Source of the DNA: Octopus sinensis
Taxonomy: Eukaryota
DNA length: 64,000 nucleotides
Assembly (NCBI RefSeq): GCF_006345805.1
Contig: NC_043018.1
Span: 22,506,001-22,570,000 of the forward strand
Direction: 5' to 3'
Position 1 is the stretch's first letter, and each line of letters starts with the position of its first letter. Both the position numbers and the translations under genes were made by a program. This document shows positions 16,393 through 19,326 of this stretch, in pieces. The notes under the pieces are model-generated. The model ran no database searches, was not told where the DNA came from, and worked only from the letters and a program-made list of their open reading frames with translations.

Positions 16393-16813
16393 AGAGAGGG
16401 AGAGAGAGAGAAGGTGAGAAAGCGAGAGATGGAGAAAGAGAGAGGAGAGAGAGAGCGAGGGAGAGAGAGATAGTTAGACAGACAAAGCAAAAGAGCTCTG
16501 CAAACGCACATACGCATGTATAGAAGAACATATCTGAGTGTTTCTATATGTATATACATTGTAGATTTGTATCTACTTCATATGCACGAAAATGTAATTA
16601 ATATGATGAATATGTCAAACAGTAACCTACTATCTTTTTATCTTGTATGTTGATGTAAGTACATTTCTATATATATATATATATATATATATTAACAATT
16701 AAGGAACGGCCATAATAGGCCATTCACCCACTAGAAATAACAGCCAAAGCTTCTACCGCAAATAAAGATTAATTCCGTAAACAGGAGAAAATTAAAAAAA
16801 CATTTACCCTGTA

Positions 16814-16918
16814 ATTTCTTGTACGGTATACCGTTTCATCCGCTGTTTAATGGTAAACTAACCTGATAAATTAAATCAAGCCAATCTTCATAAGGCCTCG
16901 GATTCTTCAGCAAGAAAT
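16814..16918 (-). ncRNA. Type I hammerhead ribozyme, array unit 1
   Basis: Stem I AUUUCUUG/CAAGAAAU (8 bp), core CUGAAGA, stem II closed by AUCCG/CGGAU, GAAA, stem III ACGG-UAUA-CCGU, GUA triplet; predicted cut at 16822/16821. Confidence 0.88.
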
Positions 16919-17302
16919 AGCTCAGGTCGGAACAGATATATACACGAGGCATACCCAATCTTGCCAAGTCAATATCTGACCTAAAATTTTCAAATCGTCG
17001 CACTCGCGCCAAATTTATCGGCAGCAAATAAATATCAGCCGTCGATTCCATTACGGAATTAACCAAAAAATTCATAATTAATCAATATAGGGTGGCAAGG
17101 AAAATTTTGTAGAATTTTATTGCCACCAGCGGCCCAGCGGGAAAAAATTAAATAGTCATAGACCATTTTTAAGTTCAACATTAACAATTAAGGAACGGCC
17201 ATAATAGGCCATTCACCCACTAGAAATAACAGCCAAAGCTTCTACCGCAAATAAAGATTAATTCCGTAAACAGGAGAAAATTAAAAAAACATTTACCCTG
17301 TA

Positions 17303-17408
17303 ATTTCTTGTACGGTATACCGTTTCATCCGCTGTTTAATGGTAAACTACCTGATTAAATTAAATCAAGCCAATCTTCCATAAGCCCTCGGATTCTTCAG
17401 CAAGAAAT
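17303..17408 (-). ncRNA. Type I hammerhead ribozyme, array unit 2
   Basis: Same intact core and stems as unit 1; predicted cut at 17311/17310. Confidence 0.88.
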
Positions 17409-17793
17409 AGCTCAGGTCGGAACAGATATATACACGAGGCATACCAATCTTGCCAAGTCAATATCTGACCTAGAATTTTCAAATCGTCGCACTCGCGCCA
17501 AATTTATCGGCAGCAAATAAATATCAGCCGTCGATTCCATTACGGAATTAACCAAAAAATTCATAATTAATCAATATAGGGTGGCAAGGAAAATTTTGTA
17601 GAATTTTATTGCCACCAGCGGCCCAGCGGGAAAAAAAATTAAATAGTCATAGACCATTTTTAAGTTCAACATTAACAATTAAGGAACGGCCATAATAGGC
17701 CATTCACCCACTAGAAATAACAGCCAAAGCTTCTACCGCAAATAAAGATTAATTCCGTAAACAGGAGAAAATTAAAAAAACATTTACCCTGTA

Positions 17794-17900
17794 ATTTCTT
17801 GTACGGTATACCGTTTCATCCGCTGTTTAATGGTAAACTAACCTGATTAAATTAAATCAAGCCAATCTTCCATAAGCCCTCGGATTTTTCAGCAAGAAAT
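17794..17900 (-). ncRNA. Type I hammerhead, array unit 3, core-mutated (CUGAAAA)
   Basis: Stems intact, but position 17887 changes core G8 to A. Confidence 0.75.
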
Positions 17901-18286
17901 AGCTCAGGTCGGAACAGATATATACACGAGGCATACACAATCTTGCCAAGTCAATATCTGACCTAAAATTTTCAAATCGTCGCACTCGCGCCAAATTTAT
18001 CGGCAGCAAATAAATATCAGCCGTCGATTCCATTACGGAATTAACCAAAAAATTCATAATTAATCAATATAGGGTGGCAAGGAAAATTTTGTAGAATTTT
18101 ATTGCCACCAGCGGCCCAGCGGGAAAAAAAATTAAATAGTCATAGACCATTTTTAAGTTCAACATTAACAATTAAGGAACGGCCATAATAGGCCATTCAC
18201 CCACTAGAAATAACAGCCAAAGCTTCTACCGCAAATAAAGATTAATTCCGTAAACAGGAGAAAATTAAAAAAACATTTACCCTGTA

Positions 18287-18393
18287 ATTTCTTGTACGGT
18301 ATACCGTTTCATCCGCTGTTTAATGGTAAACTAACCTGATTAAATTAAATCAAGCCAATCTTCCATAAGCCCTCGGATTCTTCAGCAAGAAAT
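18287..18393 (-). ncRNA. Type I hammerhead ribozyme, array unit 4
   Basis: Intact core and stems; predicted cut at 18295/18294. Confidence 0.88.
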
Positions 18394-18965
18394 AGCTCAG
18401 GTCGGAACAGATATATACACGAGGCATACCCAATCTTGCCAAGTCAATATCTGACCTAAAATTTTCAAATCGTCGCACTCGCGCCAAATTTATCGGCAGC
18501 AAATAAATATCAGCCGTCGATTCCATTACGGAATTAACCAAAAAATTCATAATTAATCAATATAGGGTGGCAAGGAAAATTTTGTAGAATTTTATTGCCA
18601 CCAGCGGCCCAGCGGGAAAAAAAATTAAATAGTCATAGACCATTTTTAAGTTCAACAAACAATTAAGGAACGGCCATAATAGGCCATTCACCCACTAGAA
18701 ATAACAGCCAAAGCTTCTACCGCAAATAAAGATTAATTCCGTAAACAGGAGTGGGCCGCTGGTGGCAATAAAATTCTACAAAATTTTCCTTGCCACCCTA
18801 TATTGATTATTATGAATTTTTTGGTTATTCCGTAATGGAATCGACGGCTGATATTTATTTGCTGCCGATAATTTGGCGCGAGTGCGACGATTTGAAAATT
18901 TTAGGTCAGATATTGACTTGGCAAGATGGGTATGCCTCGTGTATATATCTGTTCCGACCTGAGCT

Positions 18966-19072
18966 ATTTCTTGCTGAAGAATCCGAGGGCTTATGGAAGA
19001 TTGGCTTGATTTAATTTAATCAGGTTAGTTTACCATTAAACAGCGGATGAAACGGTATACCGTACAAGAAAT
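18966..19072 (+). ncRNA. Type I hammerhead ribozyme, inverted arm of the array
   Basis: atttcttg CTGAAGA atccg...cggat GAAA cgg tata ccg TA caagaaat; predicted cut after 19064. Confidence 0.88.
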
Positions 19073-19288
19073 TACAGGGTAAATGTTTTTTAATTTTCTC
19101 CTGTTTACGGAATTAATCTTTATTTGCGGTAGAAGCTTTGGCTGTTATTTCTAGTGGGTGAATGGCCTATTATGGCGTTCCTTAATTGTTAATGTTGAAC
19201 TTAAAATGGTCTATGACTATTTAATTTTTTTCCCGCTGGGCCGCTGGTGGCAATAAAATTCACAAAATTTTCCTTGCCAACCCTATTG

Positions 19289-19326
<38 letters not shown>

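What the first reader, a model, noticed from the sequence alone, without database searches (positions are those of the whole stretch)
16691..19290. ~490-bp satellite-like array whose units encode a type I hammerhead ribozyme: candidate cephalopod retrozyme / circRNA system
Seen: four full units and the inverted arm each carry a perfect 8-bp stem I, GAAA, an ACGG-UAUA-CCGU stem III and a GUA cleavage triplet; four of the five have an intact CUGAAGA core. Cut sites are spaced 489, 491 and 493 nt. Established: tandem type I HHR repeats (newt satellite 2, Schistosoma Sm-alpha, Dolichopoda pDo500, metazoan non-LTR retrozymes) are transcribed as multimers that self-cleave into monomers, and retrozyme monomers can circularise; they are thought to be mobilised by Penelope-like elements. 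Inference: this is an octopus member producing ~490-nt RNA. I do not know of a description of this family but cannot search.
Basis: partly seen in the sequence, partly recalled or inferred. Interest (0 to 1): 0.92.

Follow-up and report, generated by a model that had tools for sequence, protein, structure and literature searches.

The report
Octopus hammerhead-ribozyme tandem repeat (retrozyme)
A 2.6-kb block of nearly identical ~493-bp repeats in an Octopus genome carries a self-cleaving hammerhead ribozyme motif in each unit; it looks like a new cephalopod member of the already known animal 'retrozyme' retroelements, inserted into a (TA)n microsatellite in the manner of Penelope-like elements.

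Summary
A 493-bp tandem array (16691-18751, 4.2 units, ribozyme on the minus strand) abuts an inverted 1.1-unit arm (18752-19292, plus strand). Five type I hammerhead motifs are present. Four have a full catalytic core; one carries G8->A. Cut sites are spaced 489/491/493 nt. No dinucleotide shuffle of the window produced such a motif. The isolated 107 nt and the whole monomer both fold into the hammerhead by minimum free energy (monomer z = -5.3).

Rfam Hammerhead_1 scores only 21 bits against a gathering score of 34. The likely reasons are a ~58-nt extension of helix II and an A10.1-U11.1 pair.

The window is from an Octopus species other than O. bimaculoides.

Both arms are 5'-truncated and meet head to head. 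Both 3' ends run into (TA)n. This matches published Penelope-like-element insertion behaviour (both strands cut and extended at AT-rich DNA).

Best reading: a non-autonomous non-LTR retrozyme. This is a new member of a known kind, not a new kind. Cleavage, expression, circularisation, copy number and the autonomous partner are untested. Interest is moderate to low (0.3), not 0.92.

The parts
16668..16692 (.). Left flank: perfect (TA)12 microsatellite abutting the 3' end of the minus-strand array. Presumed target-site DNA.
   Evidence: TRF; sequence; boundary read.
16691..18751 (-). Direct array of 4.2 units (consensus 493 nt, 36.5% GC). In ribozyme-sense unit coordinates (1 = first base after the cut) it starts at position 35 (window 18751) and ends at position 131 (window 16691).
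16814..16918 (-). Type I hammerhead motif with an intact core; cut 3' of A at 16822.
   Evidence: Rfam Hammerhead_1 21.3 bits, E 0.073.
17303..17408 (-). Type I hammerhead motif with an intact core; cut 3' of A at 17311.
   Evidence: Rfam Hammerhead_1 21.5 bits, E 0.066.
17794..17900 (-). Hammerhead motif with core CUGAAAA (G8->A), predicted inactive. A transcript would stay uncut at 17802, giving a 984-nt dimer between the cuts at 18295 and 17311.
   Evidence: G8 is needed for activity (G8C abolishes cleavage, PMC11167929); the effect of G8A itself rests on my own knowledge.
18287..18393 (-). Type I hammerhead motif with an intact core; cut 3' of A at 18295. The minimum-free-energy fold of these 107 nt is the three-helix hammerhead (-35.3 kcal/mol).
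18751..18752 (.). Head-to-head junction of the two 5'-truncated arms (unit position 35 of the minus arm against position 177 of the plus arm). It is blunt, with no filler. It is not symmetric, so it is not a simple fold-back.
18752..19292 (+). Inverted arm of 1.1 units (unit positions 177-491, then 1-234). It carries ten single-base deletions and two substitutions relative to the consensus.
18966..19072 (+). Type I hammerhead motif with an intact core in the inverted arm; cut 3' of A at 19064.
   Evidence: Rfam Hammerhead_1 21.4 bits, E 0.035.
19291..19724 (.). Right flank: long degenerate (TA)n tract abutting the 3' end of the inverted arm.
   Evidence: TRF; sequence.

Best explanation
This is one insertion of a non-autonomous, non-LTR 'retrozyme' in an Octopus genome.

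Proposed RNA cycle (inferred):
- The ~493-nt unit is transcribed as a multimer.
- The type I hammerhead in each unit cuts after GUA. It acts either alone or paired with a neighbouring unit through the 12-nt palindrome ACGGUAUACCGU, which can form an extended helix III.
- This releases ~490-nt monomers with 5'-OH and 2',3'-cyclic phosphate ends.
- Helix I holds the two ends together. A host RtcB-type tRNA ligase can close them into a circle.

Proposed insertion (inferred):
- Multimeric or circular RNA was copied by the reverse transcriptase and endonuclease of a Penelope-like element.
- That element cut both strands of an AT-rich (TA)n target and primed cDNA synthesis from both.
- The result is two opposed, 5'-truncated multimeric copies that meet in the middle.

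Shown here: the motif, the array, the fold, the insertion anatomy and the host genus.

Inferred, not shown: transcription, cleavage, circularisation, and which element mobilised it.
For: Ribozyme:
- All invariant core positions are present in 4 of 5 copies: C3 U4 G5 A6 G8 A9, G12 A13 A14, A15.1-U16.1 and H17 = A.
- The hammerhead is the minimum-free-energy fold both in isolation and inside the full monomer.
- With flanks, helix I continues past an internal loop (AGCU/UA) into CCUG/CAGG, which resembles the loop 1 of type I motifs.
- No shuffle of the window produces such a motif.
- The helix III palindrome favours a duplex (-18.8 kcal/mol) over two hairpins (2 x -2.9 kcal/mol). A dimer of the 107-nt motif folds at -83.6 against -70.6 kcal/mol for two monomers.

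Retrozyme features:
- Tandem 493-bp units, 36.5% GC, no ORF longer than 79 aa and no Pfam hit.
- Monomer folding z = -5.3.
- These match the description in PMC7229834 and the 51-972 bp range of consensus lengths in bioRxiv 10.64898/2026.07.22.740005.

Retro-insertion rather than local amplification:
- The units cross the cut site uninterrupted, so the template was uncut multimeric or recircularised RNA.
- The copies differ by only six substitutions.
- The arms are head to head and both 5'-truncated, and both 3' ends sit in (TA)n.
- Penelope-like elements typically have an adjacent inverted 5'-truncated copy and a (TA)n or microsatellite bias (PMC8557442).
- A purified Penelope-like protein cuts and extends both DNA strands at AT-rich sites and starts reverse transcription internally in the RNA (PMC11167929).
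- Both 3' ends fall in a similar AU-rich motif, AUUGUUAAU and AUUGAUUA.

Hammerhead-bearing elements elsewhere in the window:
- Four further hammerhead-like motifs, against 0.06 expected. One is a Penelope-style minimal motif inside a self-inverted repeat.
Against: - Rfam Hammerhead_1 is below gathering (21 bits against 34), and only three of the five motifs were reported even in E-value mode.
- The 10.1-11.1 pair is A-U. G10.1-C11.1 is described as highly conserved (PMC4209133).
- Helix II carries a ~58-nt extension, so no recognisable loop 1-loop 2 contact can be assigned. Activity could be slow or absent.
- There is no evidence of expression.
- Only one locus is known. The unit is absent from 44.8 kb of O. 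bimaculoides.
- No predicted protein in the 5.8-billion-sequence collection shares words with the unit's longest ORF. Two exact look-ups also failed.
- No Penelope-like RT/GIY-YIG ORF occurs in the window.
- (TA)>=5 tracts cover 4.5% of the window, so landing in one by chance has p of about 0.05.
- The two 3' ends are about 103 nt apart in unit coordinates. This is not the 30-40-nt 'tail' spacing reported for Penelope-like elements.
Confidence: 0.7

Rival explanations
1. The unit is not a separate non-autonomous family. It is the tandemised pLTR/UTR portion of an autonomous Penelope-like element already catalogued in Repbase or Dfam; this locus is a heavily 5'-truncated partial-tandem insertion of that element.
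For: Penelope-like elements carry type I hammerheads in their pLTRs and insert as truncated tandem/inverted copies. In Xenopus, 24 of 57 retrozyme families matched catalogued repeats, nearly all of them Penelope-like elements and at their termini. Octopus species carry Penelope-like (Naiad) families.
Against: More than four consecutive 493-bp units lack any RT/EN coding sequence, and there is no Penelope-like ORF in 64 kb. A pLTR formed by partial tandems of a 3-4 kb element would repeat at 3-4 kb, not at 493 bp. Hammerheads of metazoan Penelope-like elements are usually minimal, with helix III of 0-2 bp; here it is 4 bp. Naiads are reported to lack canonical hammerheads. Repbase and Dfam could not be searched.
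Confidence: 0.15
2. An ordinary local satellite: a repeat that grew by unequal crossing-over or replication slippage at the DNA level. Its hammerhead would be an inert relic, with neither an RNA intermediate nor a circular RNA.
For: Only one locus was seen. The copies are near-identical, which homogenisation would also give. One core is already mutated. The A10.1-U11.1 pair and sub-threshold Rfam score allow an inactive motif.
Against: Unequal crossing-over does not explain an inverted, differently truncated arm, nor both outer ends falling in (TA)n. A complete core with three helices in 4 of 5 copies, and a hammerhead that is the minimum-free-energy fold, is not expected by chance. Tandem type I hammerhead repeats tested in coral, mussel and axolotl were all expressed and processed.
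Confidence: 0.1
3. Assembly artefact: the copy number and/or the inverted arm come from mis-assembly of long, error-prone reads across a repeat rather than from the real genome structure.
For: Differences between copies are mostly 1-nt deletions, concentrated in the inverted arm. The window contains an N gap at 57216-57315. PMC8557442 notes that tandem/inverted Penelope-like insertions often cause assembly problems.
Against: The junction is not a symmetric fold-back (unit position 35 against 177). The arm carries private substitutions. Both outer boundaries run cleanly into (TA)n. The ribozyme motif itself does not depend on the architecture.
Confidence: 0.05

Closest known systems
Metazoan non-LTR retrozymes (Cervera & de la Pena 2020, PMC7229834), e.g. 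the Mytilus galloprovincialis 350-390-bp repeats, Acropora 220-240-bp repeats and axolotl/newt satellite 2 of 330-350 bp
   Same: Type I hammerhead in each unit of a short, AT-rich, non-coding tandem repeat. The monomer RNA is predicted to be highly self-paired. Helix III/loop 3 is palindromic, allowing dimeric ribozymes. The host is a mollusc, like the mussel.
   Different: The unit is longer (493 bp against 150-450 bp in that paper, though inside the 51-972 bp range of the 2026 preprint). Helix II is 5 bp plus a ~58-nt extension rather than 4 bp capped by loop 2. The 10.1-11.1 pair is A-U rather than G-C. Helix III is 4 bp rather than 1-2 bp. No sequence similarity to those families could be tested. 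Expression and circles are not shown.
Penelope-like elements and their pLTR hammerheads (Cervera & de la Pena 2014, PMC4209133; Craig et al. 2021, PMC8557442; Frangieh et al. 2024, PMC11167929)
   Same: Insertion anatomy: partial tandem plus an adjacent inverted 5'-truncated copy; an AT-rich/(TA)n target; no discernible target-site duplication; a type I hammerhead with a palindromic helix III.
   Different: No RT or GIY-YIG ORF. The repeat period is 493 bp, not 3-4 kb. The hammerhead is not of the minimal type. The two 3' ends are ~103 nt apart rather than separated by a 30-40-nt 'tail'.
Schistosoma Sm-alpha and Dolichopoda pDo500 hammerhead repeats
   Same: Invertebrate tandem or dispersed repeats that encode a type I hammerhead and are transcribed as multimers (recalled from my own knowledge and from the introduction of PMC7229834).
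   Different: Not compared at sequence level here. Sm-alpha is SINE-like and dispersed. This locus is a single composite array.
Plant LTR retrozymes (PMC4918200)
   Same: Same logic: a non-autonomous retroelement whose RNA is cut by hammerheads and circularised.
   Different: Plant elements have type III hammerheads in two LTRs, a PBS and PPT, 4-bp target-site duplications, GC above 55% and Gypsy mobilisation. None of these applies here.

Membership tests
Metazoan non-LTR retrozymes | Type I hammerhead with a complete catalytic core and three helices in the repeat unit | tested here: met
   Four of five copies are complete. The hammerhead is the minimum-free-energy fold. 0 of 200 shuffles gave such a motif.
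Metazoan non-LTR retrozymes | [quoted passage not shown] | tested here: met
   4.2 units of 493 bp plus a 1.1-unit inverted arm. This is slightly above the 150-450 bp range of PMC7229834 and within the 51-972 bp range of the 2026 preprint.
Metazoan non-LTR retrozymes | Low GC content (<45-50%) and no LTR or coding capacity | tested here: met
   GC is 36.5%. The longest ORF is 79 aa, with no homologue and no Pfam hit. PBS and PPT motifs were not searched for specifically.
Metazoan non-LTR retrozymes | Monomer RNA predicted to be highly self-paired | tested here: met
   Minimum free energy -143.7 kcal/mol against -113.9 +/- 5.6 for shuffles, z = -5.31. About 61% of bases are paired.
Metazoan non-LTR retrozymes | Self-cleavage of the transcript at the hammerhead site | not testable with these tools
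   Needs in vitro transcription of a monomer and a dimer construct.
Metazoan non-LTR retrozymes | Accumulation of linear and circular monomer RNA in tissues | not testable with these tools
   No RNA-seq access. Exact-ORF look-ups in assemblies of public runs found nothing, but this is uninformative.
Metazoan non-LTR retrozymes | Many dispersed genomic copies (mobility) | not testable with these tools
   One locus in the 64 kb. Absent from 44.8 kb of O. bimaculoides. No octopus genome could be searched by DNA.
Metazoan non-LTR retrozymes | Co-existence with Penelope-like elements in the same genome | tested here: inconclusive
   No RT/GIY-YIG ORF in the window. However, a Penelope-style minimal hammerhead pair lies at 48.9-49.3 kb, and the literature reports Naiad elements in Octopus species.
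Rfam Hammerhead_1 (RF00163) | Score at or above the curated gathering threshold (34 bits) | tested here: not met
   No hit at gathering. Scores of 21.3-21.5 bits, E 0.035-0.073, for three of five copies. The alignment shows that the core matches and that the penalty comes from the large helix II insertion.
Canonical metazoan type I hammerhead (as defined in PMC4209133) | G10.1-C11.1 pair; helix II of ~4 bp capped by loop 2 that contacts loop 1 | tested here: not met
   The pair is A10.1-U11.1. Helix II is AUCCG/CGGAU followed by an internal loop and a ~58-nt hairpin. Tertiary contacts cannot be assigned.
Canonical metazoan type I hammerhead (as defined in PMC4209133) | Short helix III with palindromic loop, permitting a dimeric ribozyme | tested here: met
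   ACGGUAUACCGU is a perfect 12-nt palindrome. Duplex -18.8 kcal/mol against hairpin -2.9 kcal/mol. The stem is 4 bp, longer than the usual 1-2 bp.
Autonomous Penelope-like element | Single ORF with telomerase-like RT and GIY-YIG endonuclease | tested here: not met
   None among 138 ORFs of >=60 aa. The only RT is a LINE (RVT_1 + zf-RVT) at 27.5-30.9 kb.
Autonomous Penelope-like element | Insertion signature: partial tandem, adjacent inverted 5'-truncated copy, AT-rich or microsatellite target | tested here: met
   compared. This bears on how the unit was inserted, not on whether it is itself such an element.

The most novel reading that the evidence does not exclude
The octopus element may be a structurally distinct retrozyme lineage. 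In this reading its ~58-nt helix II extension and A10.1-U11.1 core make cleavage dependent on dimerisation or on a bound protein, as reported for the anole Penelope-like hammerhead. It would be mobilised by the (TA)n-targeting Naiad elements that dominate cephalopod genomes but lack hammerheads of their own. That would mean hammerhead retrozymes can parasitise a hammerhead-less Penelope-like clade.
Probability: 0.12. Interest if true: 0.55.

Novelty: new member of a known kind. Interest (0 to 1): 0.3.

Why it matters
If confirmed at the bench, this would extend ribozyme-made small circular RNAs to cephalopods, a group of interest for its unusual RNA biology. It would also provide a hammerhead variant with a very large helix II insertion and a non-canonical 10.1-11.1 pair.

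The locus is a clean single-site illustration of a recent in vitro result. Penelope-like proteins cut and extend both strands at AT-rich DNA, and this locus has two opposed 5'-truncated multimeric arms inside one (TA)n tract. That supports the view that animal retrozymes use Penelope-like machinery.

It does not open a new class or settle an open question by itself.

Tried and rejected
- Rfam at gathering threshold on the whole window found nothing.
- A metagenome scan with CTGANGA-N(45-75)-GAAACGGTATACCGTA returned five loci. On inspection they lack a complementary stem I and come from unrelated GC-richer contigs, so I treated them as chance matches. The viral-contig scan returned none.
- I tried to reach other copies through ORFs that gene callers might have predicted in the repeat. 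A homology search with the 79-aa ORF found no candidate. Exact look-ups of the 66-aa and 74-aa ORFs found nothing.
- I tried to identify the organism through the LINE ORF. The nearest hits were unnamed (SRR7158634, GCA_024449705.1), and a literature search for those accessions gave nothing. The IDO exons then gave the genus.
- I tried to project the orthologous site in O. bimaculoides. Colinearity with L008 holds only for window 57316-64000, so the empty-site test could not be done.
- I considered a fold-back assembly artefact and rejected it, because the junction is asymmetric.
- I considered Pol III transcription. It seems unlikely because the sense strand has U runs of 6-8 (sequence); this rests on inference only.
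- The bacterial promoter/terminator scanner was not used because it does not apply to an animal genome.
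Full report
**What is there**

TRF finds one array at 16691-18751 with period 493, 4.2 copies and 98% matches. The repeat finder and a BLAST of one unit against the window show that this array is followed directly by an inverted segment at 18752-19292. No other copy exists in the 64 kb.

- four on the minus strand: 16814-16918, 17303-17408, 17794-17900 and 18287-18393;
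- one on the plus strand: 18966-19072.

Each has an 8-bp helix I (AUUUCUUG/CAAGAAAU), helix II AUCCG/CGGAU enclosing a 56-58-nt insert, GAAA, helix III ACGG-UAUA-CCGU, and A17 in a GUA triplet. Four cores read CUGAAGA. The unit at 17794-17900 reads CUGAAAA (G8->A). A17 lies at 16822, 17311, 17802, 18295 and 19064, so the spacings are 489, 491 and 493 nt.

**Is it more than chance?**

- The 16-mer GAAACGGTATACCGTA occurs only in the five units.
- A loose type I descriptor gave no hit in 200 dinucleotide-preserving shuffles of the whole window. In the real window it recovered only the four intact motifs.
- The isolated 107 nt fold by minimum free energy into exactly the three-helix hammerhead (-35.3 kcal/mol).
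- The same helices survive in the minimum-free-energy fold of the whole 491-nt monomer. That monomer is far more stable than shuffled controls (-143.7 against -113.9 +/- 5.6 kcal/mol, z = -5.31).
- With flanks, helix I continues beyond a small internal loop into CCUG/CAGG, as in type I motifs that carry a 'loop 1'.

At gathering thresholds there is no hit anywhere in the window. In E-value mode Hammerhead_1 (RF00163) aligns end to end with three of the five copies, at 21.3-21.5 bits (gathering score 34) and E 0.035-0.073. The printed alignment shows that every core position matches. The cost comes from the long insertion in helix II.

Two features depart from the usual animal motif as defined in PMC4209133:
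- The 10.1-11.1 pair is A-U, where G-C is described as highly conserved.
- Helix II is not a 4-bp stem capped by a loop that could touch loop 1.

Helix III is a 4-bp stem within a perfect 12-nt palindrome. Two copies can form a 12-bp helix (-18.8 kcal/mol against -2.9 per hairpin). A dimer of the motif folds at -83.6 against -70.6 kcal/mol for two monomers. A dimeric mode of action, as in newts, axolotl and Penelope-like elements, is therefore plausible but not required. Whether the motif cleaves, and how fast, cannot be decided here.

**Host**

Two ORFs on the minus strand match Pfam IDO. Three exon peptides at about 63.9, 61.5 and 60.0 kb were padded with X to the length of a full protein. 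They hit 'indoleamine 2,3-dioxygenase 1-like [Octopus bimaculoides]' at 94% identity.

The O. bimaculoides locus (L008, GCA_001194135.2 CM046622.1) aligns colinearly with window 57316-64000 at 84-93% nucleotide identity. The window is therefore from an Octopus species other than O. bimaculoides.

**Anatomy of the insertion**

I number the unit from the first base after the cut (1) to A17 (491-493).
- The minus-strand array starts at unit position 35 (window 18751) and ends at position 131 (window 16691).
- The plus-strand arm starts at position 177 (window 18752) and ends at about position 234 (window 19292).

Both arms are thus 5'-truncated, and their 5' ends meet head to head at 18751/18752 with no filler. 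The two sides are out of register, so this is not a simple fold-back.

Both 3' ends point outward and run straight into (TA)n: (TA)12 on the left and a 434-bp degenerate (TA)n on the right. Both ends fall in a similar AU-rich motif...AUUGUUAAU|AUAU and ...AUUGAUUA|UAUA. No target-site duplication can be read in a microsatellite.

Perfect (TA)>=5 tracts cover 4.5% of the window, so landing in one by chance has a probability of roughly 0.05.

The copies are almost identical. There are six substitutions in all, one of which is the G8->A change. The other 16 variable sites are 1-2-nt deletions, many in homopolymer runs and concentrated in the inverted arm. I suspect some of these are assembly errors.

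The units run uninterrupted through the cut site. The template was therefore either uncut multimeric RNA or a religated circle copied more than once around.

**Fit with published work**

[quoted passage not shown] They are expressed as self-paired linear and circular RNAs. They were shown in a coral, a mussel (350-390 bp, up to about 1% of RNA) and axolotl, with RtcB-type ligation as the likely circularisation step. Penelope-like elements were named as the probable mobilisers.
- A 2026 preprint finds retrozyme consensus lengths of 51-972 bp, co-occurrence with Penelope-like elements, and sequence relatedness of Xenopus retrozymes to pLTRs.
- PMC8557442 describes the Penelope-like insertion signature: partial tandems, an adjacent inverted 5'-truncated copy, and microsatellite targets, with (TA)n for Naiads. 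It reports Naiads in Octopus species, noting that Naiads lack canonical hammerheads.
- PMC11167929 shows that a purified Penelope-like protein cleaves and extends both DNA strands at AT-rich sites. It starts reverse transcription inside the RNA, not at its 3' end, and does not need hammerhead cleavage for insertion in vitro.

Priming from both strands of one AT-rich target would give exactly what is seen here: two opposed arms with outward 3' ends in (TA)n and truncated 5' ends joined in the middle. This is the strongest new point the locus offers. It rests on one site, and the step from anatomy to mechanism is inference.

**What is missing**

- No RT/GIY-YIG ORF occurs among 138 ORFs of >=60 aa in the window. 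The only reverse transcriptase is a frameshifted LINE at 27.5-30.9 kb.
- I could not search any octopus genome, Dfam or Repbase by DNA. Copy number, other insertion sites and a possible match to a catalogued pLTR therefore remain open.
- Indirect routes failed.
- The unit is absent from the 44.8 kb of O. bimaculoides that I could fetch.
- No paper in the searchable library describes an octopus or cephalopod retrozyme. The giant-squid genome paper lists 235 Hammerhead_1 hits without further study.

**Other hammerhead-like motifs in the window**

A more relaxed descriptor also admits minimal motifs. It finds four further loci, where shuffles of the array-less window give a mean of 0.06 and a maximum of 1.
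- 36492-36571 (+): CUGAUGA, G10.1-C11.1 and GUC. It scores 18.3 bits with Rfam Hammerhead_1.
- 48950-48995 (-): has the hallmarks of Penelope-type minimal hammerheads, namely an extra base after A9, a 5-6-bp helix II and an ACGU palindrome. It has a degenerate partner on the other strand within a self-inverted repeat at 48920-49343. Rfam does not see it.
- 62183-62236 (-): lies in an IDO intron and is retained at the orthologous O. bimaculoides site.
- 42969-43011 (-): belongs to a repeat family whose other copy has a mutated core.

Hammerhead-bearing repeats are thus common in this stretch of genome. This fits the co-existence pattern described for retrozyme-containing animals.

**Predicted products if the motif is active**

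A minus-strand transcript would be cut after 18295, 17311 and 16822, but not after 17802 because of the G8A core. That gives a 984-nt dimer and a 489-nt monomer. The inverted arm has a single site and cannot release a monomer by itself.

**Verdict**

This is a cephalopod member of the known class of animal non-LTR retrozymes. It has an unusual but complete type I hammerhead and an insertion anatomy that points to Penelope-like machinery.

It is a new member of a known kind, not a new system. I put confidence in the retrozyme reading at about 0.7. The remainder is split between a Penelope pLTR fragment, an inert satellite and assembly problems. Interest is 0.3.

Noticed in passing
window 48920-49343 (motif 48950-48995, minus strand; partner ~49243-49333, plus strand): Penelope-style minimal hammerhead inside a self-inverted repeat. 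It reads CACCUGAUGA-A-GGCUGG...CAGCC-GAAACGUU-GUGUU, with an extra base after A9 and an ACGU palindrome. The partner arm has a mutated core (GAACC). Rfam does not detect it.
   Followed up: partly
window 36492-36571 (+): Solo type I hammerhead-like motif with CUGAUGA, a G10.1-C11.1 pair, a 6-bp helix II with a ~40-nt loop, and a GUC triplet. Rfam Hammerhead_1 gives 18.3 bits, E 0.05, below gathering. It lies in a weakly self-inverted region at 36288-36745.
   Followed up: partly
window 62183-62236 (-) and L008 23659-23937: Hammerhead-like motif (8-bp helix I, CUGAAGA, GAAA, AUAU-GGC-AUAU helix III) in an intron of the IDO-like gene. It is retained at the orthologous O. bimaculoides site at 93.5% identity, with changes in helix II.
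   Followed up: partly
window 42969-43011 (-) and ~2770-2836: Hammerhead-like motif (CUGAAGA, U10.1-A11.1, 4-bp helix I) in a repeat family present at several places in the window. The copy near 2.8 kb has GAAAC changed to GAACC. Together, the four extra motifs exceed the shuffle expectation (0.06 per window).
   Followed up: partly
window 27473-30865 (+): Frameshifted non-LTR (LINE) retrotransposon with RVT_1 and zf-RVT domains. The closest relatives are a 92% identical fragment in a public run (SRR7158634) and 50-55% identical elements in shrimps, cnidarians and fish. It is not a Penelope-like element.
   Followed up: partly
window ~59990-63990 (-): Exons of an indoleamine 2,3-dioxygenase-like gene (GGSAAQSS and EMKEYMP motifs), orthologous to O. 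bimaculoides 'IDO 1-like'. The gene continues beyond the window end. The array lies about 40 kb downstream of these exons.
   Followed up: partly
window 57216-57315: Run of 100 N, an assembly gap.
   Followed up: no
window 51328-51451: Near-perfect ~120-nt hairpin (MITE-like inverted repeat). It gives strong but sub-threshold hits to several plant and animal miRNA precursor models, most likely a generic long-hairpin effect.
   Followed up: no
window 32977-33530, 58473-58667, 59606-59842, 62262-62870, 21047-21248: SINE-like repeat family (its translation reads ...RKDERQSRPRRNLNSERNGRRNTAK...), present in many copies in the window and also in the O. bimaculoides locus. At 33 kb it is followed by a 48-nt tandem repeat.
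   Followed up: no
window 18752-19292: The inverted arm differs from the consensus mainly by ten single-base deletions. This pattern is more typical of long-read consensus errors than of mutation.
   Followed up: partly
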